Shown here one piece after another: positions 4,862 to 60,600 of a stretch of 64,000 bases of DNA. The position numbers and the translations under genes were made by a program. The notes under the pieces were generated by a model that made no database searches, was not told the DNA's origin, and saw only the letters and a list, made by a program, of their open reading frames with translations. The stretch covers positions 1,302,001 to 1,366,000 of the forward strand of contig NC_134036.1 of the NCBI RefSeq assembly GCF_964204645.1, in the 5' to 3' direction. Position 1 is the stretch's first letter, and every line of letters begins with the position of its first letter. Origin of the DNA: Tubulanus polymorphus. Its lineage: Eukaryota; Animalia; Nemertea.

Positions 4862-4934
4862 AGGCACCGCCCGGATTTGAACCGGGGATCTCCTGTTTAC
4901 TAGACAGGCGCTTTAACCGCTAAGCCACGGCGCC
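4862..4934 (-). tRNA. trnT: tRNA-Thr (anticodon AGT)
   Basis: Reverse complement GGCGCCGTGGCTTAGCGGTTAAAGCGCCTGTCTAGTAAACAGGAGATCCCCGGTTCAAATCCGGGCGGTGCCT folds as a cloverleaf with anticodon loop CT-AGT-AA, A and B boxes, and a T-run Pol III terminator directly downstream. Confidence 0.97.
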
Positions 4935-15091: not shown

Positions 15092-16727
15092 TGAATATAT
15101 TTGAGCTTGAAATTTATAAGGAACCGCAAAATTTCATGGGACCCCTATATGATAAACATACTTAACGTTTATTTGTAATAAAAGATTTTTACATGGCAAT
15201 GTAAATACGTTATTCAATGGATTATGTTTTGAGTATTTGCTGTCTCACCATCTATCTGCTTTCAAGAGGCCATTTCAATCTGGAATGAGCATAATCTAAA
15301 ACCTCAGGAGAATATTTCCTAAAAACGCTAGCTTGTGGTGATCAGGAAGAAATTGAGCTGGAAAGCTAAAAAAATAAGAATTTTGGGACTTGTTTCTTGG
15401 CTTCCCGGATTTTTCTTTTTCGCCAAGAGCAAAGAATTGCTTGAAATTTGTGTCATGCTTCGCAGAGTCCCCAGAGTTTTCTGGTCATTTGAATATATTT
15501 GAGCTTGAAATTTATAAGTGACCTCAAAATTTCATAGGACCCCCATATGATAAACATACTTAACGTTTATTTGTAATAAAAGATTTTTACATGGCAATGT
15601 CAATAAGTTATTCAATGGATTATGATTGATTATGTTTCGACTGAGCATTTGCTGCCTCGCCATCTATTATCTCAGCATCTGCTTTCAAGAGGCCGTTTCA
15701 ATCTGGAATGAGCATAATCTAAAACCTTAGGAGAATATTTCCAAAAAACGCAAGCTTGAGGTGATCAGGAAGAAATTGAGCTGGTAAGCTAAAAAGAAGA
15801 ATTTTGGGACTTGTTTCTTGGCTTCCCGGAATTTTCTTTTTTGCCAAGAGCAAAGAATTGCTTGAAATTTGTGTCATGCTTCGCAGAGTCCCCAGAGTTT
15901 TCTGGTCATTTGAATATATTTCAGCTTGAAATTAATAAGGGACATCAAGATTTCATGGGACTCCTACATAATAAACATACTTAACGTTTATTTGTAATAA
16001 AAGATTTTTACATGGCAATGTCAATACGTTATTCAATGGATTATGTTTGTCATCTTCTGATGAGTATTTGCTGTCTCAGCATCTATCTGCTTTCAAGAGG
16101 CCGTTTCAATCTGGAATGAGCATAATCTAAAACCTTAGGAGAATATTTCCAAAAAACGCAAGCTTGAGGTGATCAGGAAGAAATTGAGCTGGTAAGCTAA
16201 AAATAAGAATTTTGGGACTTGTTTCTTGGCTTCCCGGATTTTTCTTTTTCGCCAAGAGCAAAGAATTGCTTGAAATTTGTGTCATGCTTCGCAGAGTCCC
16301 CAGAGTTTTCTGGTCATTTGAATATATTTGAGCTTGAAATTTATAAGGGACATCAAGATTTCATGGGACCCCTATATGATAAGCATACTTAACGTTTATT
16401 TGTAATAAAAGATTTTTGCATGGCAATGTCAATACGTTATTCAATGGATTATGTTTGTCATCTTCTGATGAGTTTTGCTGTCTCGGCATCTATCTGCTTT
16501 CAAGAGGCCGTTTCAATCTGGAATGAGCATAATCTAAAGCCTTAGGAGAATATTTCCAGAAAAACGCTAGCTTGTGGTGATCAGGAAGAAATTGAGCTGG
16601 AAAGCTAAAAATAAGAATTTTGGGACTTGTTTCTTGGCTTCCCGGATTTTTCTTTTTCGCCAAGAGCAAAGAATTGCTTGAACTTTGTGTCATGCTTCGC
16701 AGAGCCCCCAGAGTTTTCTGGTCATTT
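15092..16727. repeat. Tandem repeat, four copies of a ~400-420 bp unit
   Basis: Units begin TGAATATATTT(G/C)AGCTTGAAATT at ~15092, 15490, 15911 and 16319, and end GAGTTTTCTGGTCATTT. Copies are highly similar. Confidence 0.95.
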
Positions 16728-17174
16728 TAAAAACCAAGCTAACAGCTTAAGCTTAAGTAAAAACTATCAAAACGAATACGTGTATGATTGCACGTTCTTC
16801 CAGATACACGAAAGGCAAACCAATTTGCCTGTGGCAAATTATTATTTACACGTCTTTTGTAGTATGTATCTGTTTATCTTAATTACTATTTCGTGTGATA
16901 CGGGGAATAATCTATGGCTTGTCTCATTTGACACGAAAGGGGTGTCCTGTCTATCGTGCTAAGGATTTAAGTGGAGTTAATCCGTTAACATTAGGAATTG
17001 AAACTGTGTATTTTTTCGTTTTGACAATTTGTTCTTTTTGCTTTTCAAAGATTTGTTTTTCTTTTTTCATTCATAAAACCTACAGATCACTATGACCCTT
17101 GATGTTCTGTTTTGGCCTTCTTCCTACCTCCCTTAGATCAAAATAAACTAGCAACTCGGAACTTTGAGAGTTTA

Positions 17175-17248: not shown

Positions 17249-20200
17249 ATGTACCATGAAAGAAACATCTTTCGTTTTTTGCTCTTGTTCATTCTATGTT
17301 TATTCATCAGAAACACATCGGGTGAGTTTAATCAAAATCCACTGGTTCCAGAGTTGTTAAAATGTAGAAATTATTAATCTGCTATGATGACAAACCCTAA
17401 AGGCAAGCCCAGAAAGGTGCCATCAGGATCTAAGCCAATCGTTGTTGCGGGTGGAAAGCTCAGAGAAGAACTACAGAAAGAAACTATGTCACTGTCACGA
17501 TTCAAACTATCAATTGTCGGGGTTGGAGAGCTCGGAGAAGAACAATATTTGGATGTTTCAAATAATCTTGTTTTTTATTTTGTCATTTCAGCAAAATGTT
17601 TTGGGAAGAGTTGTATTGGTTGGGAGTGTCATTGCAGTACGCCCCAAAATAAATGTCCAATAAGGGACCCAGAAAGCGCTTTAACATGTCAAACTCCTGG
17701 TACCTGTGAGTCTGCATTTTGGACTGGACCAGCTTGTCAAATCGGTAAGTTTCCTGTATTAACTGTTTCTGCTCCAGTAAAACGAGGTCAAATATCACTG
17801 AACCTCGGATTTATCTCAGATTAACGGATTAACTCAATATTTCGTGCGAAACGGCTCTCATTGAAATGCCCATATAAGGGAAAACGGAAATAGATCCAGG
17901 AATTGCCGTGACTAAAGGTGACACTAATCCGTATACGGATTAACGTCACTAATCCATAAGCGGGAAAAAATCTATTAGTAAAAATATCATAGATTTATGA
18001 AATATCTGGGAACTGTCGACGAACTGAGATCAACTCTAATTATTTCATCGAGTAAAGAAAAAAAAATGTTAGTTTTGTTTAATTCTAGTTGAAATTGTGA
18101 AATAACTTTGAATCAATTTGTGTTTGTTCGTTTTGAAAATTCGTGAAATAATTTAAATCTTCTATTCACAAAATGTGTTTTGTAGGAAACGTGGCTCGTG
18201 GTAAAACAGTTACAATGTCATCCACTCACTCACCCGCTATTAAATGTACAGATGGTCAGACGGTAACAAGTGGTGGTCGTGAAATATGTCACACTAATTT
18301 GGATCAAGACGCCTGGATTAGAATTGATCTCGGAACTCAATACGTGGTACATGAAGTTACACTTTGGGATAGAACAGACGCGACGAGCTGCGACCAGCCG
18401 TGGAGTGAGTACATATTATCATTTTTGATATCATTTATTATTTAGAAACCCTACAGACACCACTGAGGTCACATTTATACTCAACTTTATCAAAAGTAAA
18501 TCAACCAAGGAATATAACTTTGAACTCGAAAAGATTTTTTGAGAATATAGTTTAATCAACCGATTTTCAGACTGTAAATTTGGAATTTACTTTTTCAGTC
18601 GAAAACAATTGGTTTTTACATCTGATGCAATCACGAAATTCTTCCTTGAACTTTCCTCTATTTTATGCTCGATTTCTTTATTTCAAAAATGTACGTATAA
18701 TTCATTTTGAAGGTTCTCTATTTTTTTCTTTTCTCAGAAAAACGCGCGCGCAACCTGGAGATTCGAGTCGGAAATAACCCGAGTATTTTTACATCTAACC
18801 AGAAATGTGCTTACCATGGCCCCGCTCTCTGCGGAACACATAAAACATTAGCATGCAGCCCAGGTCCTATAGTTGGTCGATACGTCACCGTTCAACACAA
18901 GAACATTAGTAAGGCAGAGTATCTCAACCTGGCAGAAATAGAAGTTATCGGGTTCAAATATATCGGTTAGTTTTGCGATTGGAACTGAGAGAGTATGAAC
19001 AAGATTATCAATTTAGAAAGGAATATTCAGTGAATTTTTAATGAGAATTTACCTAACAAATTTGAACGAATAAGTTGTATTTTTGAAATAAGAACTCCTT
19101 TTTACGTGTCACGTGTAACCGTTATTTCTGTTCAACGAATATTAGTTTTTTGTATCACCATTAGATTTCTGTTTTAAATTTCTGTTTAGCACCCGGTGAT
19201 TGTAGTAAGGGATCGAACTCATTTGGATGTATGATTGAATGTAGATGTAACAACAATAGTGAAAGTTGTGACTATTTGAGTGGTATCTGTCAATCTGGCT
19301 GTTCACAGAATTACATCGGAAAGTGGTGCGAGTCAGGTATATTACACTGAATCATAGATTCCTGGGAATCTCACTCCTTATTCCCTGAATATATTAACCA
19401 ATATGAATCGGAAAAGATACCAATTGAAAATGACCGAAAGTAAAGGATCCTTACCCTTCATTTTATTTGATTTACCTGCAATCAACATCGATTTATTTTT
19501 TAGAATTGAAGTTGTTTTCGAATTTGACAAAATCTGCGCTGACAGATAACAGTGTTAATGTCAGTTGGACAGCTTACTCGGGTTCTGTAGTAGATTCAGG
19601 ACGTGGTACTGTCAGCGTTCAGTATCAAGTCGTTTATCGTAAGATATCAGAAAACACTTGGACTAATCAGGAATCTGCAGGAGTCCTTACACATCACACA
19701 ATTACTGGTTTAACTCCTAATACCGAGTATAAGATAGCTGTTAGTCTACAGAAATTAGTTAACAGTCAACTTATATCAACTGCGAGTCAAACTAGTCCAA
19801 TACTAAATATACAGACTTTGTGTGCAGGTAAAAACCCTTCATTCTTATAAACTCTTAAATCACCAATTCAAACACAGAATTGTGTTAAACATGTTTGTTT
19901 TACTGTAGTTCTATTAAACAGTGCTAAAGATGTTCGTGTGGTGCTGCCGTCACCAAGAAGATGTCGATTCGTATTTTATAAGTAATTTGTCTGTCGTGTC
20001 ATTTCAGTACCAGGACCTCCCGCTTCTCTTGACTTCTCATTCACAAAAGATACATTGAAAACTACATTGACATGGACCGCACCAAACAGTCCAAATTGTG
20101 ACTTCATCAATTATCGGGTAGGAATTAACTGGTCCTGATCGGTAGAGGGCACCACCTGCGCTATACTGTAACGTGTCCCTATCTGTTTTCAGCTCACGTG

Positions 20201-23200
20201 TGAACCCATCAGTACAACTTCCACAACACCTTTAACAGACATAAAAACAATCAACAAACCTAAAATCAAAGGCTCCATCACAACTTTAGACATAACGACG
20301 TCACTGATACCTTTTACTCAATACAACTGTTCAATTTTTGCTTTGAATAGTATAGGCGGAGGCTCGCCTGCCAGTGTTAGCTTTTGGACAGGTTTGTAAT
20401 TTGAACACAACGACCTCAAGTTTCCACTGATGTCACTTGTCAAAATTGTCACTTACTGATATTTCAGGTGAAATAACAATTCCCCTACTGGTTGTCAAGA
20501 AAGCAGCGGTAACAGACACGACTGTTACACTTCAAATAACGCGTGTTAACACTGGTAACATCACGTAAGTGTCCTCTTATTTTCATCTATAAATACCGCA
20601 TGATCTTATAAAACAATTTTTATCTGATTTGCAGCGGTTACGAGGTGATCGTGAAGAAACACAATGGACCAATCAGCCGTCGCCGTAAGCTTACAGTCAA
20701 CCAATCACAGTACGTCTCGTACGAAGAAGCTAAACAGCGAGGATTATCAGTTTATATTACTGCAGTTCTACCACCGGAAGTGCCCTCTGAGTTTATAGTT
20801 GGTGATACGCGTAACTATAGTGGTTACTTTAATGCTCCTCTAGAAACTGGGAAATCCTACAGTTTTATTTTAGGAATCATTGAGAATTATAACGGAGTGA
20901 GTTCATCTTGTCTATCAATACAAATTGTAGTTTACAATTTAAAAGCCTCAAGCCTTCTCTTCTCATTGTCTAGCAAACGTTTTGGCATTATCCCCCAATA
21001 GAACAGCAAGAGCGAATCATTGTTAAAGCACCGTGGAGTATTGCATGGATGATAATAGGTGGCGTTGGAGCAGCTCTTCTCACACTCTTATTGATGGCTG
21101 TTGTGCAAGTAATAGTAAGGAGGTACGAGTGAATAGTGGTGACCTCTATAATATTTCATCAGTTGACGATCGCCCCCTATTCACCAAACCCCCTCATTCA
21201 GTTACCCAACACTAATGGACACCTAAACTTTTTCAAATTTTGCAGACGCGGTGGGTGCAAAACTCGACAAACGTCGAACAATGCAGATGTATCCATGGAG
21301 AATATTCCACCTTCCAATGAAAGTATTGGTAAAGCTTTGGAAAGACTGAAGAGTGTCCCGGGGGAAGAAAATGCGAATCAGGAACATACAGCTCATGTAA
21401 ATTCTTCAAGAGCCGTAGAGGAAACTTACTTGAATCGTTCTCAATCATCAACAGAAGGAAATACAACTCATGCAAATTCTTCAAGGGAAGTAGAGGAAAC
21501 TTACTTGAATCGTTCTCAATCATCAACAGAAGGAAATACAACTCACGCAAATTCTTCAAGAGAAGTGGAGGGAACTTACTTGAATCGTTCTCAATCATCA
21601 ACAGAAGGAAATACAACTCACGCAAATTCTTCAAGAGAAGTGGAGGCAACTTACTTGAATCGTTCTCAATCATCAACAGAGGGAAATACAACTCACGCAA
21701 ATTCTTCAAGGGAGTTAGAGGCAACTTACGTGAATTGTTCTAAATCATCAAGAGCAGGAAATACAACTCACGCAAATTTTTCAAGGGAAGTAGAGGGAAC
21801 TTACTTGAATGGTTCTCAATCATCAACAGAAGGAAATACAACTCACGCAAATTCTTCAAGAGAAGTGGAGGCAACTTACTTGAATCGTTCTCAATCATCA
21901 ACAGAAGGAAATACAACTCACGCAAATTCTTCAAGAGAAGTAGAGGCAACTTACGTGAATTGTTCTAAATCATCAAGAGCAGGAAATACAACTCACGCAA
22001 ATTCTTCAAGGGAAGTAGAGGGAACTTACTTGAATGGTTCTCAATCATCAAAAGAGGGAAATACAACCCATGCAAATTCTTCAAGAGAAGTAGAGGCAAC
22101 TTACTTGAATCGTTCTAAATCATCAAGAGCAGGAAATACAGCTCATACAAATTTTTCAAGGGAAGTAAAAGTAACTTATTTTAATCGTTCTAAATCATCA
22201 AAAGAAGCAAAAACAGCTCATACAAATTCTTCAAGGGAAGTAAAGGCAACTTACTTGAATCGTTCTAAATCATCAAGAGCAGGAAATACAACTCATGCAA
22301 ATTCTTCAAGGGAAGTAAAGGCAACTTACTTGAATCGTTCTAAATCATCACGAGAAGGAAATACAATTTATGCAAATTCTTCAAGAGACGTGGAGGCAAC
22401 TTACGTGAATTGTTCTAAATCATCAAGAGAGGGAAATACAGTTTATGCAAATTCTGCATTATCAAGAGGTTTGTCTGGTGAATCTTGTAGATTTTGAGAA
22501 GTTGAAACCTAATTTGTTTTATGATTTTTCTCCATTCCATATAGAAAGCTCCGGGTATATCAATATCTATGAAGATGGAAATGCAGTAGATGAATCGCAA
22601 GATGATGAGGATCATCACTTCGCTTCTAAAGGTGCTACTATGATTTGTGACCTGTTGGGAGACACTTTGATTAAGACCTCTGATAATTGGAAGAATATGA
22701 ATAAAGAATTTCAGGTAGAATCGCCGTGAGGTTGGGACTGCGCGTTGGTAAGACATGTGTTTATGTTCTGGATCTATTTTGTCTTTAGGGTGTTCTCAAG
22801 TTGAGACGTGGATTGAGCGAGTGCGCTGGGAAAGTGGAAAATGTTGAGAAAAACAGCTTTCCAAACATGTTGGCCTGTAGGTATTGCCAGCTCATGACGT
22901 TGACATCAGTTTTGTTATTTAAATGAACTGCATTGTGATATAACTGTATTACTTTATGTCATTCCACTGAGTTAATGTTGTGTTGTCTTTCTAGATGATT
23001 CGACTAGAGTTGTTCTGGAACAAACCGGTGAAGAACCAACATCAGATTACATCAATGCCAACTATATTTGGGTGATAAATCAATCCCTCTCTGCTCTTGA
23101 AAATGTTGCCACGTCCTCCTATTGTATATAAACAGAAATTCTTGTTTTCTTTTTCAGGGACTAACTGGTCATGTGATATGCATTGCTTGCCAGGGTAAGT

Positions 23201-25840
23201 CTTAATAACTTTCCAATAATCTATAATATGCTACTTTGGCGCTCATGGAAGTTGCTCTTTCAGCTCCATTGCCATCTACATTCAATGACCATTGGCGGAT
23301 GATTTGGCAAGAGAAATGTCCGGCTATTATTGTACTCACAGATCTGACTGAAGGACAAGACAAAGATAAGAAGGTATGTCAATACTAGCAGAGGTGGTCC
23401 TGTGTACACAGTCAAAAAGTATAAAAGTGTCTTTTCATATTCCAATTGCAGGTGAAGTGTCATTCATATTGGCCAACAAAACTGAACACGAAAGGTCGAT
23501 ATGGAGATATAACAGTAAAAGTTGCAAAGAAAATGGAAAAACACACTGAGCCTCCGGCAGTGGTTCATTTCCTATCGATTAAAAAGGTGATGATCAACCC
23601 TCTTGTTTTACCATTAGTGACCTAATTGTTGGTATTCATGTTACTGTTGCTATCTCTATAAGTTTGGTTCCGATATCGATTTTGACAACATGCTGTCGAG
23701 GCTCTGTTTTGATACCTTGCATCACATCAGTATTATCTATAACCTGCCTCTCTCTCGATGAGTAACGCTGGATTTACTTTATAGCGTGGCCACAAACAAG
23801 CACATAAACTATTACTGTTCCAATATCGAGGATGGCCGGATCATGGTGTACCGTTCCCGGCTTTATCTGTTGTTCGTATGCAACAGTTCATCAAACAGCG
23901 TCTTACCGACCCGGATCAGGGACTTGTGCTGGTTCATGGCAGGTAAATTAATTCGAAAATCTTCCAGTCCTTTACTGCTAAGGAGACGTGTAGAAATGTT
24001 ATGGCTTGTTTTGTGTTCCCAGTGCTGGTGCTGGAAGGACAGGTTGTTATATCGCAACGGAGCAGCTTCTTGAAAAAGCTAAGAAAGATGGACTCGTTAA
24101 CGTATTCGACATGTTTAGGAAACTCCGTCAACAAAGACCAGAAATGATCCAAAATATGGTAAACCTTAATGTGGCAAATGTCTCTCATTTCACGCTTCCA
24201 AAATCCAAAACTTCTCAAACATGTTGTTTTATTAATATTCCCTGCAGAAACAGTACATTCTCGTGCACCAGATTCTACTGGAGGAACTGGTACTGGGACC
24301 AGTGGCATACCCGACCAGGAGTTTCAGAGAATCATACGAGGAAAGAAAGGCAACGCGCCCTGTATCTAGAAACGTGTCCGACAAAATAGAGGAACAATTT
24401 CTTGTACGTATTAAGTTCGTCCAAAATGAGACGAAGGTTTCGATCCTGGAACAAAAATCTGGATGGTAGCAGTGAACCATTGACCAAGTTAAACTAGAGA
24501 CTAAATCGTTCCTCCTTATGGGTCCTAATTGTTTCATCTTGGTTTGGTTTTGAGGGAAACAATTTTTTCACTGAGCTTCTATTAATACAGGTGTTGAAGG
24601 CATCGGCTCCGATTCAGGACGAGGAATCACTAGCAGTGGCCAAACTACTCAACAATGTTTACAAGTCTCGATACGAAGACATCCTTCCCGAGGCACAGTA
24701 TCAACCGCAACTCTCACATAAAGGGTTCATTAATGCTTCATTTGTGCACGTGAGTTTGATTATGATTTCATAGCTATCCGTAGAATATCCGGGCAGATCC
24801 GGTGGAGGGACATTATGACTCGATATTCTTCTGTCGAGATAAGATGTAAGAATCTGACTGATGTAAATACTTTCTTTTTTACAGACGATCACAGATGACA
24901 ACGTGTCTATAACCACACAAAGTCCAATGCCAAACACAATTACTGACTTCTGGCAAATGATCTTTGACTATAACTGTGAAATTATTGTGATGATGCATCA
25001 AGAATATCCACAAGATCCGGTAAGGCTTACTCCTATTCTAGGACTGCCTTATCTAGATGTCTCCTAAAATACATCTTCTGATTTTAGACATATGCAAGCT
25101 ACTGGCCTGCAGCTGGAAGCATCAAATGCAGTCCTTTTACAATCACTGTGGAGGAAGTTTCATTACTCTGTAAGACCATCGTTCGTCGGGATTTGACCAT
25201 CCAAAAACAGAATGTATGTTGAGTTTAATATTCTCGATAGCACCTTTTCAAAGATAGGTGGCTGTATTTTTCGGAATTTCCTTCGACATTGCTATTTACT
25301 ATGACCTGATCAGATCAATTGTATTTCTTTGATTTCACAGGAATCGCATCTGATTCGTCAGATCCAGTTTTTAGGATGGCCTGAGGATGAGTCAGTTCCT
25401 GATTTACAATATCTATTCGAGTTTGTGAAGTTAGTTACAAGAGAACACGTCACCAGTCCTATTGTTGTACATTGCATGTTCGTATCTTAGCAACATCAGT
25501 CAATTATTTAAAACAACATTACACATTTTAACGATTATGCAAATTTTGAAGGGACAGCACAACGAGAACAGGGCTATTTTGTGCGGCATTTGAACTGATC
25601 TCCAAGGCGCCATCTAGCGAAAAAATCGACATTTATCACTGTATACAAAAACTACGAATGACTCGACCTCAATTCATTCCAAATTTGGTAAGAAATTTAT
25701 CGATTTCGTAGTAGTTTTTACAAGAAATTGCATGGATGTATTTTTCTTTTTTTTTTTATTTATAGGAACAATACAAGTTACTGCATGAACTGGTGATATT
25801 GTATTTACAAGGACACGACACTTATGTGAACCTTAGTTAG
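17249..25840 (+). CDS. Gene A: F-type lectin / EGF / FN3 receptor-type PTP-like protein (D1 Cys-to-Gly pseudophosphatase) with a 14x cytoplasmic Tyr repeat
   Basis: GT-AG exons in consistent phase: SP 17249-17321; EGF 17592-17744; FTL 18186-18404 + 18738-18965 (H-x26-R-x-D); EGF 19190-19336; FN3 19504-19827; FN3 20008-20117 + 20193-20391; membrane-proximal 20468-20564 + 20635-20896 ([17 protein letters not shown]); TM 20974-21122; repeat exon 21246-22468. D1 motifs [48 protein letters not shown]2 motifs [26 protein letters not shown]. Ends DTYVNLS*. Confidence 0.9.
21380..22455 (+). repeat. Coding minisatellite, 75 bp x 14 (25-aa unit [25 protein letters not shown])
   Basis: First TYLN and last TYVN codons are 975 bp (13 x 75) apart and the frame is open throughout. 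Confidence 0.97.
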
Positions 25841-30164: not shown

Positions 30165-41377
<11,213 letters not shown>

Positions 41378-43224: not shown

Positions 43225-46200
43225 ATGTATCGTGAAAGAAACATCTTTCGTTTTCTGCTGTTGTTGATTCTGTGTTTATTCATCACAAACACATCAGGTG
43301 AGTTAATCAATAATAATTCATTGGTTCCAGAGCTGTTGAAAACGTGGAAATTATAGATTTGACGATTTCAAACCTTAAAGTAGACCTCAGAAAGATGCGA
43401 CAAGGAAAAGTCTGTCACTGTCAGGATTCAAACTATCAATTGTCGGGGGTGGAGAGCTCAGGATGGAGCGACATTTGGAGAAGGGCATTTTAGGATAGGC
43501 AAAAAATGTTGTTTCTGTGTTTGTTATTTCAGCGAAATGTTTTGGGAAGAGTTGTACCGGTTGGTTGTGTCATTGCAGTAATACAGCTTTGAATGTGTGT
43601 CCAATCAAGGGTCAGAATATAGATGGCGCTTTAACGTGTCCAAATCATAACACTGCATGCGAGTCTACAATAAAAATTCCATATCTTTGACTTTATAATG
43701 CGACGTGAGTTATTGCAGATTCAAACTATAGCTATGTCACAAATATTTGCAGGTTGTGGCTCTAGGTAAAAAGGGTTGGGGACCACGGAGTGAAATTGTT
43801 TACTTTTTGGCGCAAGTCGGAAGTAAGTTAAGGCCTTTTTTTAATTAGTTGGAGCACGAATTTTTAAAGGAAGATTTTGGAAGGGTGAAGAAAAAAAAAA
43901 TTTAAAAAAATTTGGTATTTTATATAACAATGGAAGGGTGAGTGGGAAAAAAAGAAAATAAAAAAATCATTTTTCATTGCTATCTTATATACTAATGTGG
44001 AAGGAGAAACAATAAAATAAAAAAAAATTTATTAGCGGTGAGGTTGTTGACAGAACTCACTACTCGTCTGTCGTTCTCGCGATGCAACTTTCTCACGATT
44101 ACTTGGAAACAGAAAGTTTCCTCGACGGCGGTGGCGTTGGCGTGACCGGCCATTTTGTTGCCATACTAACAGCAGCACGAAACCGTCAAATTATTCAATT
44201 CAAATTCAAATCAAGTTCATTTTCATGAATAAGATGTCCGATGAGAGACAGAAAAAACAAAATTTGAATTTTTTTCATACAGAAATTGAATTTTAGGATG
44301 GAAGGCGGTCAAAACAAATATGAATAATTAATTATTTTACAAAATGTGCGAATTTATGTGGAAGGGCGACGGAGATAGAAATTAAAAAAAGGAATTTCCC
44401 AATTACCAAAATGACCCGAATATCGGCGGCGGATCCTTGCTCCAACTAATTTAAAGAAAAGGCCTAAGCAGTATCGTTGGAAATTTCAAATTCAAGGGAT
44501 CGTAAGTTAAAATCTATCTGTGGTGTTTATTTCAGTACCAGGACCTCCCGCTTCTCTCGACTTCTCATTCACAAAGGATACATTGAAAACAACATTGACA
44601 TGGATAGCACCAAACAGTCCAAATGGTGACATCATTAATTATCGGGTAGGAATTCTCTTGTCCAGACCTGTAGAGGGCACCACCTGTTCTATACTGTAAC
44701 ATATCTCCTATCTGTTTTCAGCTCACGTGTGAACCCATCAGTACAACTTCCACTACACCTTTATCAGACATAAAAACAATCAACAAACCTAAAGTCATAG
44801 GCTCCATCACAACTTTAGACATAACGACGTCACTGATACATTTTACTCAATACAACTGTTCAATGTATGCCTCAACTAGTAAAGGTGAAGGCTCACCTGC
44901 TTATGTATAATCCACGACCTCTAAAAACCAACGCAAATATCTTATCATTTGATAATCGTCCGATGCCCCCTAGTCACAGAAATACCCACTCACCGAGTTA
45001 CCCACAATTTCGACGCCTTTCTTTTCTTTTGCAGACGCGGTGGGTTCAAAACTAAAGAAGCATCGAACAATGAAGTATCCATGGAGAATATTTCACCTTC
45101 CGATAAAAGTATTGGTAAACCTTTGGCAAGATTGAAGGGTATCCAAAAACAGGAACATACAGCTTATATAAATTCTACATTTTCAAGAGGTTTGTCTATT
45201 GAAGCTTTTAGATTTTGGAAGTTGAAGCCTAAAAATGTTTTTTAACACCAAAGATTCTTCTCCACGTAGAAAGCTCCGTGTATTGCAATATCTATGATGA
45301 TCCGGAAACGCAAGATGGCGAGGATCATCACTACGAAATCGCTTCTAAAGGCGCTACTATGATTTGTGACCTGTTGGGAGACACCTTGATGAAAACCTCT
45401 GATGGATGGATGAATATGAATGAAGAATTTCAGGTAGAATTGTAGGGAGGTTGGGACTGCGCGTTGGTAAGGTTTACATTTTGGAACTCTTTTATCTGTA
45501 GAGTGTGTTCTCAAGTCCAGACGTGGATTGAGCGAGTGCGCTGAGAAAGGAGAAAATGCTGAGAAAAACAGGTTTCAAAACATATTTGCCTGTAAGTATT
45601 ACCTGTTCATCATGTTGATATACCTCATTTTATACCTGTATCTTGCCAGGTCATCGATCTTATTTATTTAGTGAAACATCTCTATTGTCGTATTATTGAC
45701 TTTTAAGTGTGGTGTTGCTTTTTTCTAGATGATTCGACTAGAGTTGTTCTGGAACAAACCGGTGAAGATCCAACATCAGATTACATCAATGCCAATTACA
45801 TTCGGGTAAGGAATCAATCCGCCTCTGCTCTTGAGAAGTTTTTGTCCTGTGCTTATAATCAATGTTGTTGTAGATGATATGGATATTCCATTTTCAGGAA
45901 ATGAAAAAATTAATTTCAGAGCTTGCCAGGGTCAGTTTTGTTACCTTTCTCATAATCATTTACAAAGTCAATTCAACTTTCTATTCAACTTTCTGATAAT
46001 GGATTTTTTTCATCGCATTTTGATCCTCATGTTGTCATTTCAGCTCCATTGTCATCTACAATCAGTGACCATTGGCGGATGATTTGGCAAGAGAAATGTC
46101 CGGTTATTATTGTACTCACTGATCCTACTGAAGGACAAGGCAAAGATAAGAAGGTTTCAAAGCAACTACTGAGTAAACATAAGTTTTTGAAAATTTTAAC

Positions 46201-48646
46201 TTTTGATATTCCAATTGCAGGTGAAGTGTCATCTATATTGGCCAACAAAACTGGATGCAACAGGTCGATATGGAGATATTACAGTGACAGTTGCAGAGAA
46301 AATGGAAAAACACATTGAGCCTCCGGCAGTGGTTCATTTCCTATCGATTACAAAGGTAATGATCATACTCTTGTTTTACCATGGCACCTAGTGACCTATA
46401 TAAGTGCTGTTATCTGTAATTTCAAACGACTTCATACGTGTAGACATCGATATGACAACATTTTATGATGAGGTTCTGTTTCGATGTTACATTATATCAC
46501 ATAAGCAATATCTATAACCAGTCTCTATTGATGAGTAACGTTGGATTTAATTTATAGCGTGGCCACAAACAAGCACATAATCTAATAGTTTGTCACTATC
46601 GAGGATGGCCGGATCATGGTGTACCGTTCCCGGCTTCATCTGTTGTTCGTATGCAACAGTTCATCAAACAGCGTCTTACTGACCCGGATCAGGGACTTGT
46701 GCTGATTCATGGCAGGTAAATTAATTCGAAATCTTCCGGTCCTTTACCGTTAGGGAGACGTGTAGAAATGTTACGGCTAGTTTTGTGTTCTCAGTGCTGG
46801 TGCTGGAAGGACAGGTTGTTATATCGCAACGGAGCAGCTTCTTGAAAAAGCTAAGAAAGATGGACTCGTTAACGTATTCGACATGTTTAGGAAATTACGA
46901 CAACAAAGACCAGAAATGATCCAAGATATGGTAAATCTTAATAAAGTTACTGCCTCTCATTTCACGCTTCCAAAATGGATAACTTCAACGTGTTCCTTTA
47001 TTACTATCTACTTTAGAAACAGTACATTCTCGTGCACCAGATTCTACTGGAGGAACTGGTACTGGGACCGGTGGCATACCCGACCACGAGTTTCAGAGAA
47101 TCATACGAGGAAAGAAAGGCAACGCGTTCTGTATCTAGAAACGTATCTGACAAAATACAGGAACAACTACTAGTACGTTTTAAGATCGGCCAAAATGAGA
47201 TGAAGGTTTCGAAGCCTGAGTACATACATTAAGATTGCAGCAATGAATTCACTGACCAAGTTAAACTAGAGACCAAATAGTTTCTCCTTGATTTTGAGGA
47301 GACATTTTTTAAAAAGTTTTTCCAAAGAGCTGTTTTCCAATCCAGGTTCTGAAGGCATCAACTCCGATTCAGGACGAGGAATCACTAGCAGTGGCCAAAC
47401 TACTCAACAATGTTAACAAGTCTCGATACAAAGACATCCTTCCTGAGGCACAGTATCAACCGCAACTCTCGCATAAAGGGTTCATTAATGCTTCATTTGT
47501 GCACGTGAGTTTGATTCTGATTTAATAGCTATCCGTGGAATATCTGGGCAGGTAGAGAATGAGGCATTAGCCTAGATATTCTTCATTTGAGATCCTGATA
47601 ACTCATGAAAATCTAATCGTAACTTTCCTTTTAACAGACGATCACAAATGCTGACGTTTTTATAGCTACACAAAGTCCACTACAAAATACAATTTTTGAT
47701 TTCTGGCAAATGATCTTTGACTATAACTGTGAACTTATTGTGATGATGCATCAAGAATATCCACAAGATCCGGTAAGGCTACTCCTAGTCTAGCACTGCC
47801 TAGTATAGATATCTTCTAAAAGTATGACGGTCTGGTTCGCGGAGATCCTTGTTCAGAATATATCTTCTAATTTCAGACATATGCAGACTATTGGCCTGCA
47901 GCTGGAAGTATCGAATTCGGTCCTTTTACAGTCACTGTGGAGGAGGTATCATTATGCTGTAAGACCATCGTTCGTCGGGATTTGATCCTCCAAAAACAGA
48001 ATGTATGTTGAGTTATTTCGGTAGCTACTGTTCAGAGAAATATGGCTGCATTTTTCGGAATTTCTTTCGACGTTGCTATTTACAATAACCTGATCAGATC
48101 AATTGTATTTCTTCGATCTCACAGGAATCACATCAGATTCGTCAGATCCAGTTTTTAGGATGGCCTGAGGATGAGTCAGTTCCTGATGTACATAATCTAT
48201 TCGAGTTTGTGAAGTTAGCTAAAAGTGAACGCGTCACCAGTCCCATTGTTGTGCATTGCATGTTCGTATCTTAGCAACGTCAGTCAATTATTCAAAACAC
48301 CATCACATATTTATCGATTATGCAAATTTTACAGGGACAGCACAACGAGAACGGGACTGTTTTGTGCGGCATTTGAACTGATCACCAAGGCGCCATCTAG
48401 CGAACAAATCGACATTTATCACTGTATACAAAAACTACGAATGACTCGACCTCAATTCATTCCAAATTTGGTAAGAAATTAATCGATTTTCTTTGTATTT
48501 TCACGAGTAATTTTATTGATGTATTTTTCTTGTTTTCGTATTCATAGGAACAGTACAAGTTTCTACACGATCTGGTGATATTCTATTTACAAGGATTCGA
48601 CACTTATGTGAACGTACATGTCGTTAATGGCACCAGCACAGATTGA
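43225..48646 (+). pseudogene. Gene C: internally deleted RPTP-like paralogue (no lectin, no TM)
   Basis: SP exon intact. The EGF exon breaks at ~43687 into TGA (43688-43690) and jumps to FN3 intron sequence. A second deletion at ~44900 removes the membrane-proximal and TM exons. The D1 mini-exon at 45898-45930 is 33 nt versus 37 nt in paralogues (frameshift). D1 IHGSAGAGR and D2 exons are otherwise recognisable. Confidence 0.8.
43832..44464. mobile_element. Non-autonomous PIF/Harbinger (Tourist-like) element, 633 bp
   Basis: TIRs GGCCTTTT...AATTAGTTGGAGCA / TGCTCCAACTAATT...AAAAGGCC with a TAA target-site duplication. The empty site with a single TAA is in the gene D intron (GTAAGTAAACAATAT, ~55897). 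Confidence 0.88.
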
Positions 48647-53900: not shown

Positions 53901-54501
53901 TGTTTGTTTTACTGTAGATCCATTAATCGGTCCTAAAGATGTTCGTGTGGTGTCCACAGCGGTTGAGAACAGTAACACGTGGCCCCAGACAACCAATCTG
54001 ATACTTACATGGACCGTAAGTGTGCCTCAACCAGAATTACATAAATTCACCTGGGCCCGGTTTTATAGACTATAAGTGTTACCTTCAACCCGGGGCTAAC
54101 TTAATTTATTTTCTTACTTTATTAACTAATTCACCTGATGTTCATTTATATCTATATGACAAGGGAAGAAAATGTGACCTTCCCTTTCAGTGACACATGA
54201 TAAAAACATGTAGTGAATTATAATTATGTTGCAGGCTTTAACTGCTGCAGAGTTACAGTGTGACGTCACTAAAGCTGTTTATCAAGTCGAGTATAAACAA
54301 CTGAACCGACAAACATGGACCACAACAGTGGCGCAACCTACCGGCCACACACTAACAGGACTAGAACCATATACTGATTATGAAGTTAGAGTTGGTGTAA
54401 AGAATGACGTCACTCAGAAATTCATTTACACCAAACCTAAAAGTTACAAAACGTCGACTGCAGGTAACTTGAAAATGAAACAAGATGCGATATATATATA
54501 T

Positions 54502-54544
<43 letters not shown>

Positions 54545-54570
54545 ATATATATATATAATGCATTATACAT

Positions 54571-54619
<49 letters not shown>

Positions 54620-57600: not shown

Positions 57601-60600
57601 GAACTTTTTGAGGCAAATTTTGAAGACGCTTTGATCAATTACCTTGATCCTTCGAATATATTTGAATCCTCCAAGGGCTCATCAGCATAAGAAAAATTGG
57701 GTCGATCGGACTCGAGATGGCCGTCCTATGACCTTTTTAGTGGCCAAAAATGTCAATTTTGGCCAGAATTCGGAGTCCTGTAGCTTCCTGCTGGTTTGCC
57801 ATTTCTCATTGCAATTTGTGATGGGTATTCATTGAAAAGGGATGTTTTATACTAGAGACAGGTATTTTTGATCAGCCAATTATGACGGCCATCTTGGTGT
57901 CATCAGTTCTTCCACATTATATTGATACCTAAGCATATTTTGTTACCACAATCAATTAGAAAGTTGTAGCCCATAAAGTGTTCTATGATGTCGGTGAGTT
58001 TAAAGGTCATTGGTTTTTGTATATGGCCACCAGGGGGCGTTGAACAATAGATTGATATTTCAATATTATATTTGTACCTATGCATATTTTGATACCACAA
58101 TCAATTGCAAAGTTGTAGCTCATGACATCGTCTATGATTGTGGTGAGTTTTAAGGACATTAGTTATTCTATATGGTCACCAGGGGGCGTTGAATAGTAGA
58201 AGAACTTAGTATTTCCTTATTATATTGGTACCTAGGTATATTTTGTTACCATGATCAATTGCAAAGTTGTAGTTCATGACATCTATGATTGTGGTGAGTT
58301 TCAAGGTCATTGGTTTTTGTACATGGTCACCAGGAGGCGTTAAATATTGAAATTGTTAGATTGTTGAGCATTTGAAACCACTTCCCAAGTGGGCATGGTG
58401 TCCTAGTTTCACATCGTTCGAAACTGACAAACATCGAACAATGCCCCCTATTCACAGCCCCTCGCCGAGTTACCCAACAATATGGTCTTTACTTAAGCAG
58501 ACGCGGTGGGTTCAAAACTAAAGAAACTTCGAGCAATGAAGTAGGCATGGAGATTGTTTCACCTTCCGATAAAAGTATTGGAAAACCTTTGGCAAGATTG
58601 AAGGGTAACCCAAGACGAGAAAATACAGCTCATGCGAATTCTACATTATCAATAGGTTTGTTTAATGAAGCTTTTATATTTGAAGCCCAATGTTTTAACA
58701 CTATAATGACTCATGACTCTCTCCATATAGAAAGCTGCGCGTATTACAGTATCTATGACGATCCGAACACAGTATATGATACGCAAGATGGCGAGGATCA
58801 TCATTACGACATATCTTCTAAAGGCGCTACTATTATTTGTGACCTTTTGGGAGAGACCTTAATGAAGACCTCTGATGAGTGGAAGAATATGAATGAAGAA
58901 TTTCAGGTAGAATTGTAGGGAGGTTTGGACTGCGCGTTGGTAAGGTTTACATTTTGGATCTCTTTTTTTCCGTAGAGTGTTCTCAAATTTAGACGAGGAT
59001 TGAGCGACTGCGCTGAGAAAGTGGAGAATCTTGCAAAAAATAGGTTTCCAGACATATTGGCCTGTAGGTATTACCTGGTGATCATATAGACACATGAGTT
59101 CTGTCGTAACAACAATCATTTTGACACAAGCTTTTACACATTAACAGGAGTCGCCTTGAAATTAGTGATACATAGTATAATTTATTACCTATATGTTGAC
59201 ATAAGTTCCATCATTTACAAGATCCGCCTTCTTCAACATCTCTATTAATCTTTTTGTCATTTAAATGATTAGAACTGCTTTGTGACATCATTTTGTGTTG
59301 TTTTTCTAGATGATTCGACTAGAGTTGTTCTGGAACAAATCGGCGAAGATCCAACATCAGATTACATCAATGCCAATTACATTTGGGTAAGGAATCAATC
59401 CTTCTGTTCTTGAGAAGTTTTTGTCTCGTGCTTATAATGTTGTCATAGTTGATGTGAATATTTCATTTTCAGGGATTGACTGGTCATGTAATATGCATTG
59501 CATGCCAGGGTAAGTCTTCTTAACATTCCAATAATCTGTTCCGATGTTATTTTGGCGCTCATGTAAGTCGGTATTTCATTTTACTTGCCCTTTCAGCTCC
59601 ATTGCCATCTACAATCAATGACCATTGGCGGATGATTTGGCAAGAGAAATGCCCGGCTATCATTGTACTCACCGACCTGACTGAAGGACATGGCAAAGAT
59701 AAGAAGGTTGCAAAAAAATTTTTTCGAAAAAGGCTTTCAGATGCTGCTGATTAAACAAGGAGAATTATGAAAAATGTGTCTTTTCATATTCCAATTGCAG
59801 GTGAAATGTTACTTATATTGGCCAACAAAACTGGACACAAAAAGTCGATATGGAGATATAACAGTGACAGTTGCAAAGAAAATGGAAAAACACACTGAGC
59901 CTCCGGCAGTGGTTCATTTCCTATCGATTACAAAGGTAATGATCATACTCTTGTTTTACCATGGCACCTAGTGTGACCTATATAAGTGCTGATATATGTG
60001 ATTTCAAAACGACTTCACTCGAGACATACGTGTAGACATCGATATGACAACATTTTATGATGAGGTTTTGTTTCGATGTAACATTGTTTGACATCAGTAT
60101 TGTCTATGACCAGTCTCTCCCGATGAGTAACTTGAGATTTATTTCATAGCGTGGCCACAAACAAGCACATTATCTACTAGTGTTTCACTATCGAGGATGG
60201 CCGGATCATGGTGTACCGTTCCCGGCTTCATCTGTTGTTCGTATGCAACAGTTCATCAAACAGCGTCTTACTGACCCGGATCAGGGACTTGTGCTGATTC
60301 ATGGCAGGTAAATTAATTCGAAAATCTTCCAGTCCTTTACCGTTAAGGAGACGTGTAGAAATGTTATTGTTTGTGTTGTGTTCTCAGTGCTGGTGCTGGA
60401 AGGACAGGTTGTTATATCGCAACGGAGCAGCTTCTTGAAAAAGCTAAGAAAGATGGACTCGTTAACGTATTCGACATGTTTAGGAAATTACGACAACAAA
60501 GACCAGGAATGATCCAAAATATGGTAAACCTGTAGTAACTGTCTCTCATTTCACGCTTCCAAAATCCAAAACTTCTCCAACATGTTGTTTGACTATCTAC

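What the first reader, a model, noticed from the sequence alone, without database searches (positions are those of the whole stretch)
23932..24050. Membrane-proximal PTP domain (D1) has catalytic Cys-to-Gly in all four paralogues
Seen: the signature is split by an intron and reads (V/I)[10 protein letters not shown]. The codon is GGC rather than TGC at 23938, 39516, 46711 and 60303. The WPD loop (WPDHGVP), P-loop Arg and Q-loop are kept, and KNRY becomes KN(R/S)F. Established: D1 is normally the active domain of tandem RPTPs, and Cys-to-Gly at this site defines the pseudophosphatase STYX. Inference: the change predates the duplications and the frames stayed open, so a non-catalytic role such as pTyr binding or protection was probably retained. 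The ORF track hides this because the motif spans a splice junction.
Basis: partly seen in the sequence, partly recalled or inferred. Interest (0 to 1): 0.88.

Follow-up and report, generated by a model that had tools for sequence, protein, structure and literature searches.

The report
Receptor phosphatase family lacking catalytic cysteine
A ribbon worm (Tubulanus polymorphus) carries at least 17 copies of a receptor tyrosine phosphatase whose normally active domain has glycine in place of the catalytic cysteine, yet the copies are expressed, correctly spliced and kept by selection, so they probably work as non-enzymatic receptors.

Summary
In all four window genes the D1 exon ends CAT GGC AG|GT and the next exon begins T GCT GGT GCT GGA AGG, which reads (V/I)[10 protein letters not shown]. 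The Gly aligns on the catalytic Cys of PTPRS D1.

RNA-like contigs join exactly at 23942/24023 and show no T at 23938. The RefSeq model P0016 equals gene A's exon chain.

The window is Tubulanus polymorphus chromosome C12. The four genes belong to a family with 17 Gly copies plus one fragment. Fourteen copies have fully intact D1 and D2 exons.

A sister clade of three genes keeps Cys. The one close Cys copy, on C10, is a broken relic. A single TGC-to-GGC change before the expansion is not rejected (AU p = 0.32).

D1 is under purifying selection: omega is about 0.27, the same as D2 and as D1 of the Cys clade. At sites conserved in other RPTPs, only three are changed in the Gly clade alone.

D2 keeps Cys and Arg but has WPE, no P-loop glycines and Pro for the first Q-loop Gln. 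The receptor probably has no efficient catalytic domain.

pTyr binding is plausible but untested.

The scan lists this same stretch once more (s1-487531).

The parts
23938..23940 (+). Gene A: GGC (Gly) codon at the position of the catalytic Cys of D1
   Evidence: Read directly. Aligned on the Cys of PTPRS D1. No other base reported in DNA or RNA contigs.
23785..23942 (+). Gene A D1 exon 6: WPDHGVP loop through VLVHG, plus the first two bases of the Ser codon
   Evidence: Pfam PF00102 positions 128-175. Exon chain equals P0016. RNA joints at both ends.
23943..24022 (+). 80-nt GT..AG intron that splits the [10 protein letters not shown] signature
   Evidence: X4 contigs skip it: joint 23939->20 with cut +3, depth 2606. 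It is conserved in all copies.
24023..24158 (+). Gene A D1 exon 7: the rest of the P-loop (S)AGAGRTG through the first Q-loop Gln (EMIQNM)
   Evidence: Pfam PF00102 positions 177-223.
22789..24403 (+). Gene A D1 as a whole, 8 exons: 22789-22876, 22995-23071, 23158-23194, 23264-23373, 23452-23586, 23785-23942, 24023-24158, 24248-24403
   Evidence: Exon chain translates exactly to P0016 residues 1034 onward. RNA joints. AF2 model pLDDT 81.7, closest to PTPRK D1 with TM 0.88.
24591..25837 (+). Gene A D2, 6 exons: 24591-24749, 24885-25019, 25088-25213, 25341-25477, 25552-25687, 25766-25837. It has KSRY, WPE, VVHC|MDSTTRTG and Pro at the first Q-loop Gln.
   Evidence: Best PDB matches are RPTP alpha and epsilon D2.
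39516..39518 (+). Gene B: GGC codon at the D1 catalytic position
   Evidence: All 14 cytoplasmic exons are intact (L034).
46711..46713 (+). Gene C: GGC codon at the D1 catalytic position
45898..45930 (+). Gene C D1 exon 3 with a 4-nt deletion (33 nt against 37 nt). This is a frameshift, or, through a weak GT donor 4 nt downstream, a scrambled IACQ motif.
60303..60305 (+). Gene D: GGC codon at the D1 catalytic position. Gene D corresponds to RefSeq model P0020.
   Evidence: All 14 cytoplasmic exons are intact (L032).
17564..21129 (+). Gene A ectodomain and transmembrane exons: Cys-rich N-terminus, F5/8 type C lectin-like domain, FN3 repeats, Fn3_PTPRU/PTP_tm membrane-proximal domain, hydrophobic TM stretch
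   Evidence: Pfam, tblastn with P0002, ORF text.

Best explanation
These genes encode receptor-type tyrosine phosphatases of the tandem-domain kind. Each has a lectin-like F5/8-C domain plus FN3 repeats outside the cell, one TM segment, and D1 and D2 inside.

D1 lost its nucleophile through a single TGC-to-GGC change. That change happened in the Tubulanus lineage, after the split from a Cys-retaining sister clade and before a burst of tandem duplications.

Without the Cys thiolate D1 cannot form the phospho-enzyme intermediate, so it is catalytically dead. This step is inferred from established PTP chemistry and was not assayed here.

The rest of D1 is preserved and is kept by purifying selection as strong as in the Cys-bearing paralogues. 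This covers the fold, the WPD Asp, the P-loop backbone and Arg, and both Q-loop Gln.

D2 is also non-canonical: WPE, CMDSTTR in place of CSAGxGR, and Pro at the first Q-loop Gln. The most likely working mode is therefore a signalling receptor with no efficient phosphatase activity. Its D1 would serve as a non-hydrolysing docking module that binds phosphotyrosine proteins as a natural substrate trap. It would shield or sequester them at the membrane, in competition with the active paralogues.

My estimates:
- D1 dead but functional and expressed: about 0.9.
- The retained function is pTyr-pocket binding in particular: about 0.45.
For: - Gly codon in all 4 window genes and in 17 copies plus 1 fragment genome-wide.
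- Gly aligned on the catalytic Cys of PTPRS D1.
- Spliced contigs join 23942/24023 with G at 23938. RefSeq models read (V/I/L)[10 protein letters not shown], and P0016 equals the exon chain.
- 14 copies have all 14 cytoplasmic exons without indels or stops, with only one changed splice dinucleotide: L027 has GG instead of AG at the exon 11 acceptor.
- Pairwise dN/dS is 0.256 for D1, 0.249 for D2 and 0.283 for D1 of the Cys clade.
- On the tree, D1 shows 158.5 nonsynonymous against 162.5 synonymous changes, omega 0.277, p = 3e-29. D2 gives 0.274.
- Only 3 positions conserved in other RPTP D1s are changed in the Gly clade alone: Y80C, P213L and C218G.
- The AF2 model has pLDDT 81.7 and its top fold matches are PTPRK, PTPRT and PTPRM D1.
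- Precedents: STYX has Gly for Cys and regains activity with Gly-to-Cys (PMC8269279). PTPRU is a double-pseudophosphatase decoy receptor (PMC7320164).
Against: - No biochemical data exist. pTyr binding by a Cys-to-Gly classical PTP domain has not been shown here.
- The catalytic-motif codons are not significantly more constrained than the rest of D1 (N/S 32/43 against 126/119, p = 0.24). Selection could therefore be acting on the fold or on surfaces rather than on the pocket.
- Copies are young (dS about 0.14), so conservation of individual residues carries little weight.
- The RNA evidence is from contigs at 95% likeness or more. It shows expression of the family, not of gene A specifically, and X4 is not on record as RNA.
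- D2 keeps Cys and Arg, so some activity cannot be excluded.
- Gene conversion among tandem copies may inflate the parsimony counts, although it does not by itself lower dN/dS.
Confidence: 0.6

Rival explanations
1. PTPRU-like decoy or scaffold that does not use the pTyr pocket. D1 is kept only as a structural partner of D2 and as a protein-protein surface. Partners are recruited independently of phosphorylation, mainly through D2.
For: PTPRU and PTPRK cytoplasmic domains bind partners independently of phosphorylation, and D2 recruits substrates (PMC7320164). D1's closest structures are R2B-family D1s. Motif codons are not more constrained than the rest of D1. D2 omega equals D1 omega.
Against: In PTPRU the pocket itself is wrecked (divergent pTyr loop, WPE, occluded P-loop). 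Here WPD, the P-loop Arg, both Gln and the pTyr-loop aromatic are all kept, and only 3 clade-specific changes fall at conserved sites.
Confidence: 0.27
2. Catalysis has moved to D2, which keeps the Cys-X5-Arg spacing, and D1 has become its regulatory or targeting domain. This would invert the usual D1/D2 division of labour.
For: D2 reads VVHC-MDSTTRTG with Cys and Arg in all intact copies, and KSRY keeps the Tyr. D2 is under the same purifying selection. Its nearest solved relatives are RPTP alpha and epsilon D2. From my own knowledge, not tested here: those D2 domains have low intrinsic activity.
Against: D2 has WPE instead of WPD, lacks every P-loop glycine (CMDSTTR against CSAGxGR), and has Pro where the first Q-loop Gln activates water. 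The same D2 form occurs in the Cys-retaining sister clade (P0002), so it did not change in step with the loss in D1.
Confidence: 0.1
3. The Gly copies are decaying pseudogenes and the open frames only reflect their youth.
For: Some copies are broken: gene C has a 4-nt deletion, the C7 copy is truncated after exon 6, the C12:1.11 Mb copy lacks exons 1-3, and C57 holds a fragment. Copies are young, with dS about 0.14.
Against: Omega is about 0.27, with p = 3e-29 against neutrality, in 14 intact copies. Intron divergence (0.23) exceeds dS and far exceeds dN. Only one splice dinucleotide is changed across those 14 copies, the exon 11 acceptor of L027. Spliced contigs are present at high depth, and RefSeq models exist.
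Confidence: 0.02
4. Artefact: assembly error, alternative splicing or editing restores HCS in the mRNA.
For: None found.
Against: The Gly codon lies wholly inside the upstream exon, so no splice choice at this 80-nt intron can change it. 17 independent genomic copies carry GGC. DNA-like and RNA-like contigs from 4 runs show no variant at 23938 at the 10% threshold.
Confidence: 0.01

Closest known systems
PTPRU (human R2B receptor; both D1 and D2 are pseudophosphatase domains; PMC7320164)
   Same: Both are tandem-domain receptors in which the membrane-proximal D1 is inactive while keeping D1-type sequence and fold. PTPRU is proposed to act as a decoy that competes with active paralogues. The R2B D1 structures (PTPRK, PTPRT, PTPRM) are the best fold matches of the model, and PTPRU D1 was the best PDB hit of the WPD exon alone.
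   Different: PTPRU keeps the catalytic Cys and is dead because the pTyr loop is disordered, the WPD loop reads WPE and the P-loop is occluded. Here the Cys itself is replaced by Gly and the other motifs are canonical. The ectodomain has an F5/8 type C domain plus FN3 repeats; no MAM or Ig hit was found in gene A. PTPRU is a single gene, whereas this is a family of 17 or more copies.
STYX (dual-specificity-phosphatase-fold pseudophosphatase; PMC8269279)
   Same: Both have the same substitution, Gly at the nucleophilic Cys of the HCX5R motif, with the Arg kept. STYX binds phosphorylated partners and competes with active phosphatases, and Gly-to-Cys restores its activity.
   Different: STYX is a small cytosolic DUSP-fold protein. 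This is a classical pTyr-specific PTP domain (Pfam PF00102) in position D1 of a transmembrane receptor. The two are not homologous at family level beyond the PTP superfamily.
Cys-retaining Tubulanus paralogues (P0002 / XP_074661320 and P0012, C12:0.28-0.31 Mb)
   Same: Same architecture and same D2 (VHCMDSTTRTG, WPE). They share KNRF and have 74% identity in D1 to gene A. They form the sister clade in the tree with 100/100 support.
   Different: They read [11 protein letters not shown] (CAC TGC). They also differ in the helix after the P-loop. There are only 3 copies.
IA-2 / PTPRN and PTPRN2 (from my own knowledge, not tested here)
   Same: They are receptor-type PTP-family proteins without phosphatase activity that still have conserved functions.
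   Different: They have a single PTP domain. Inactivation is through P-loop Ala-to-Asp and WPD-loop changes, and the Cys is retained.

Membership tests
Classical (pTyr-specific) PTP domain, Pfam PF00102 | Sequence match to the Y_phosphatase profile across the domain | tested here: met
   Six D1 exons and four D2 exons hit PF00102 at consecutive profile positions. phmmer against PDB RPTP D1s gives E = 8e-90.
Classical (pTyr-specific) PTP domain, Pfam PF00102 | PTP fold | tested here: met
   AF2 model pLDDT 81.7, pTM 0.79. Foldseek top hit is PTPRK D1 2c7s, TM 0.88, E = 4e-27.
Catalytically competent classical PTP | Nucleophilic Cys in the (I/V)HCSxGxGR(S/T)G motif | tested here: not met
   D1 reads (V/I)[10 protein letters not shown]. 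The codon is GGC in 17 copies and aligns on the Cys of 2fh7.
Catalytically competent classical PTP | WPD general acid, P-loop Arg and Q-loop Gln | tested here: met
   D1 has WPDHGVP, AGAGRTG and QNMKQY in all intact copies, with one WPDHDVP and one QDMKQY. D2 does not meet this feature: WPE, and Pro for the first Gln.
Catalytically competent classical PTP | Measured phosphatase activity | not testable with these tools
   Needs a recombinant protein assay.
Tandem-domain receptor PTP (RPTP) | Ectodomain, single TM segment, and D1 followed by D2 | tested here: met
   F5/8-C, fn3 and Fn3_PTPRU/PTP_tm hits. A hydrophobic stretch is encoded at 21030-21129. Two PF00102 domains are present. Full-length RefSeq models exist.
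R2B subfamily (PTPRK/M/T/U) | MAM and Ig domains in the ectodomain | tested here: not met
   Pfam on gene A ectodomain exons gives F5/8 type C and FN3 only. The precomputed Pfam lists of the family's proteins show no MAM accession that I recognised. Only D1 and the membrane-proximal Fn3_PTPRU domain resemble R2B.
STYX family | Gly in place of the catalytic Cys | tested here: met
STYX family | Dual-specificity phosphatase (DSPc) type small domain, orthology to STYX | tested here: not met
   All best profile and structure matches are classical receptor PTP D1 domains. This is analogy, not membership.
Pseudophosphatase (sequence definition: missing an essential catalytic residue, gene retained) | Loss of an essential residue together with evidence of retention | tested here: met
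   Cys-to-Gly change, omega about 0.27, intact frames in 14 copies and spliced transcripts.

The most novel reading that the evidence does not exclude
After one point mutation removed the nucleophile, a receptor phosphatase was converted into a phosphotyrosine 'reader/protector' receptor. It then radiated into a repertoire of 14 or more functional genes. The lectin-like ectodomain loops diversify (omega about 1, with in-frame indels), while the dead cytoplasmic module is held constant. One member (gene A) adds a juxtamembrane array of about 16 YxN motifs.

This would be a lineage-specific, immune-type or adhesion-type recognition receptor family whose output is sequestration or scaffolding of pTyr proteins rather than dephosphorylation. 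It would also be a natural in vivo substrate trap.
Probability: 0.25. Interest if true: 0.75.

Novelty: new variant of a known kind. Interest (0 to 1): 0.58.

Why it matters
In tandem-domain receptor phosphatases D1 is the catalytic domain. The one well-studied exception in humans, PTPRU, keeps its Cys and is dead for structural reasons.

Here the nucleophile alone is gone, in an otherwise canonical D1. Cys-bearing sister genes in the same genome provide a built-in control, and there are 14 or more intact, selected and expressed copies.

This gives a clean natural experiment on what a PTP domain is kept for once catalysis is lost. It also offers natural substrate-trapping domains that could be used to find partners. 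Finally, it is an example of a pseudoenzyme form out-expanding its active ancestor (17 copies against 3).

Tried and rejected
- Alternative splicing to restore HCS is rejected. The Gly codon lies entirely in the upstream exon, the intron is 80 nt, and the RNA joint is at 23942/24023.
- KNRF as a sign of inactivation is rejected. It is shared with Cys-bearing relatives.
- The close Cys copy on C10 (L033; P0001, 353 aa) cannot serve as an active counterpart. It has an in-frame stop at codon 48 of the cytoplasmic segment and frameshifts in D2 exons 11 and 13.
- Searches for Gly-type relatives in other species found none closer than about 40% identity, and all of those carry Cys. A blank here is weak evidence, because nemertean data are scarce and the length filter applies.
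- Pocket-specific constraint was tested and is not significant.
- The position of L033 in the tree is unresolved (a polytomy). One origin of Gly is not rejected (AU p = 0.315) but is not proven.
- The look-up of encoding contigs for P0020 returned nothing, so I could not see whether gene C has a gene call.
- Rfam and tRNA scans found nothing in or near the stretch.
- I sent no self-joined spliced model to any search tool. Searches were made exon by exon by reference, or with the stored database protein P0016, whose residues 1034 onward equal gene A's exon chain. Codon analyses mapped codons by genome coordinate in local scripts.
Full report
**What is there**

The window is G000:C12:1302001-1366000 of a 268-Mb genome. 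Its proteins are RefSeq models of the nemertean Tubulanus polymorphus.

Self-comparison and tblastn with the 1740-aa paralogue P0002 show four tandem genes on the + strand:
- Gene A: 17564-25837.
- Gene B: about 33973-41368, preceded by a partial duplicate of its 5' exons at 30411-33571.
- Gene C: 43529-48619, with a short ectodomain.
- Gene D: 51330-62165.

Pfam on gene A's exons gives an F5/8 type C lectin-like domain, FN3 repeats and the membrane-proximal Fn3_PTPRU/PTP_tm domain. Two PTP domains (PF00102) follow. A hydrophobic TM stretch is encoded at 21030-21129.

**The observation**

At 23935-23942 the exon reads CAT GGC AG, followed by GTAAAT. After an 80-nt intron the next exon starts at 24023 with T GCT GGT GCT GGA AGG ACA GGT.

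The four copies are identical at both splice sites and at the codon. The Gly codons are at 23938, 39516, 46711 and 60303.

phmmer aligns '[16 protein letters not shown]' on 'ivvhCSAGVGRTGCF' of PTPRS D1. WPDHGVP, the P-loop Arg and QNMKQY are present. The KNRY position is KNSF in gene A and KNRF in the others.

**Splicing and expression**

The exon chain is 22789-22876, 22995-23071, 23158-23194, 23264-23373, 23452-23586, 23785-23942, 24023-24158 and 24248-24403 for D1. For D2 it is 24591-24749, 24885-25019, 25088-25213, 25341-25477, 25552-25687 and 25766-25837. This chain translates exactly to residues 1034-1587 of RefSeq model P0016, LOC141914037 isoform X2.

Ten further RefSeq cluster representatives of the family read (V/I/L)[10 protein letters not shown], with one reading HGRAGAGRTG.

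In public run X4, contigs skip seven of these introns with GT..AG ends. This includes 23943-24022, at depth 2606 in 2 contigs. A loose end there reads GGTTCATGG before the acceptor.

No run shows another base at 23938. The neighbouring 23932 G/A difference (Val/Ile) shows that several paralogues contribute.

Caveats: these are contigs at 95% likeness or more, so expression is shown for the family and not for gene A alone. X4 is not on record as RNA, and its spliced contigs are what indicate RNA.

**The family is much larger than the window shows**

A six-frame search and a DNA search of the whole genome find 17 copies with CAT GGC at this place:
- 14 lie in C12:1.08-1.47 Mb.
- One lies at C12:2.51 Mb.
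- One lies on C7 and one on C9.

There is also a 5'-truncated fragment on C57, which also begins with GGC.

Cys is retained (TGC) in several other places:
- Three genes at C12:0.28-0.31 Mb, which correspond to P0002 and P0012.
- More distant RPTPs (L022-L025).
- One close copy on C10 (L008/L033, 88% identical in this exon).

That C10 copy has an in-frame stop at codon 48 and frameshifts in D2 exons 11 and 13. It is annotated only as a 353-359-aa fragment, so it is a relic and not an active counterpart.

**Integrity**

Of the 17 Gly copies, 14 have all 14 cytoplasmic exons without indels or stops. They have one changed splice dinucleotide: L027 has GG instead of AG at the exon 11 acceptor.

The exceptions are:
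- The C7 copy, which is lost after exon 6.
- The C12:1.11 Mb copy, in which exons 1-3 cannot be aligned.
- Gene C of the window. Its exon 3 is 33 nt (45898-45930) against 37 nt elsewhere. This shifts the frame into a stop in exon 4, unless a weak GT donor 4 nt downstream is used. Even then the conserved IACQ motif is scrambled.

**History**

An ML tree of the coding columns, with the trait codon removed, separates the three Cys genes from a clade of all Gly copies plus the C10 relic, with 100/100 support. Inside that clade the tree is a near-polytomy.

Holding the 17 Gly copies together costs 6.1 lnL units (AU p = 0.315). A single TGC-to-GGC change just after the C10 lineage split is therefore compatible with the data, but it is not proven. 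A reversion or a gene conversion in the C10 copy is the alternative.

Synonymous divergence is about 0.14 within the Gly clade and about 0.5 to the Cys clade. No closer relative exists outside Tubulanus in the databases searched, and all foreign hits carry Cys in D1.

**Selection**

Pairwise Nei-Gojobori values among the 14 intact copies are as follows:

| Region | dN | dS | Ratio |
|---|---|---|---|
| D1, Gly clade | 0.036 | 0.140 | 0.256 |
| D2, Gly clade | 0.044 | 0.177 | 0.249 |
| D1, Cys clade | | | 0.283 |

Intron divergence among the same copies is 0.23.

Codon parsimony on the tree gives, for D1, 158.5 nonsynonymous against 162.5 synonymous changes on 698 and 199 sites. That is omega 0.277, with binomial p = 3e-29 against neutrality. 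D2 gives 0.274, and D1 and D2 do not differ.

Site counts ignore transition bias and recombination inflates the counts, but neither effect can bring omega near 1.

The ten classical motifs have N/S 32/43 against 126/119 elsewhere, which is not significant (p = 0.24).

I compared the family with 19 RPTP D1s from other phyla. Only three positions conserved in those domains are changed in the Gly clade alone: Y80C, P213L and C218G. 33 positions are changed in both Tubulanus clades. D1 has therefore not degenerated; it lost its nucleophile and little else.

The AF2 model of P0016 D1 is confident (pLDDT 81.7). It is closest to PTPRK, PTPRT and PTPRM D1, with TM 0.87-0.88.

**D2**

D2 reads KSRY, WPE and VVHC-MDSTTRTG, and [11 protein letters not shown] where RPTP alpha D2 has RPHMVQTLEQY. 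Cys and Arg are therefore kept, but the general acid is Glu, the P-loop has no glycine and the first Q-loop Gln is Pro.

The same D2 occurs in the Cys clade. I infer from established PTP mechanism, without a test, that D2 is at best weakly active. The Gly-clade receptors would then be double pseudophosphatases.

**Mechanism**

Shown:
- Loss of the nucleophile.
- Retention of the domain under selection.
- Correct splicing.
- Expansion of the family.

Inferred: D1 cannot turn over substrate. Because the phosphate-binding P-loop, Arg, WPD Asp, the Gln residues and the pTyr-loop aromatic remain, it may still bind phosphotyrosine and so shield or sequester partners.

Two precedents frame this reading. 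STYX has Gly for Cys, and Gly-to-Cys restores its activity (PMC8269279). PTPRU is a receptor with two pseudophosphatase domains that binds PTPRK substrates and acts as a decoy (PMC7320164). PTPRU differs from the Tubulanus family in keeping its Cys while its pocket is wrecked.

The main rival reading is a PTPRU-like scaffold that does not use the pocket. A shift of catalysis to D2 is less likely. Decay and artefact are excluded for practical purposes.

**Context**

The ectodomains differ in FN3 number between the four genes. The first F5/8-C exon shows omega of about 0.9-1.6, with in-frame indels, against 0.2-0.5 in the second exon (the counts are small).

Gene A's RefSeq model includes a 25-aa x 14 repeat rich in YxN motifs between the TM segment and D1.

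Together these features suggest receptors with a variable outside and a fixed, non-catalytic inside. That is the speculative 'novel case'.

I sent no self-joined spliced model to any search tool. Exons were searched by reference, and the stored protein P0016 stood in for gene A's product.

Noticed in passing
window 21380-22458: A 75-nt tandem repeat is part of the coding sequence of RefSeq model P0016. It encodes about 14 copies of a 25-aa unit, each with a Tyr in a YxN context (TYLNRS / TYVNCS), between the TM segment and D1 of gene A. It is largely absent from genes B-D. A cytoplasmic array of potential SH2-docking tyrosines next to a dead phosphatase domain is suggestive.
   Followed up: partly
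window 18176-18409, 31037-31276, 34614-34853, 51847-52068: The first exon of the F5/8 type C lectin-like domain has pairwise dN/dS of about 0.9-1.6 and in-frame indels in two loops. The second exon and the cytoplasmic domains have 0.2-0.5. Counts are small (16-26 N against 2-7 S).
   Followed up: partly
window 30411-33571: There is a partial duplicate of the 5' ectodomain exons (P0002 residues 24-505) directly upstream of gene B's own copy of the same exons (33973-36525). It is either a gene fragment or extra lectin/FN3 exons of gene B.
   Followed up: no
window 45898-45930 (gene C): A 4-nt deletion in D1 exon 3, together with a much shortened ectodomain (only P0002 residues 24-75 and then 796 onward). 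Gene C may be a pseudogene.
   Followed up: partly
L033 = G000:C10:9376270-9380970 (minus strand): This is the only close paralogue with TGC (Cys) at the D1 site. It is a dispersed, broken copy, with a stop at codon 48 and frameshifts in D2, and is annotated as a 353-aa 'PTPRU-like' protein (P0001). It is useful as a marker of the ancestral state.
   Followed up: yes
window 15092-16730: About four tandem copies of a 410-nt unit (about 92% identical) lie upstream of gene A. An ORF motif recurs on the minus strand. Not examined.
   Followed up: no
window 33683-33916 and 54490-54619: A short-period, self-complementary repeat matches itself on both strands. It occurs in the introns of genes B and D at the same relative place.
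   Followed up: no
window 4862-4934 (minus strand): tRNA-Thr (AGT), Rfam score 69 bits.
   Followed up: no
L027 = G000:C12:1447051-1451751: An otherwise intact Gly-clade copy has GG instead of AG at the acceptor of D2 exon 11.
   Followed up: no
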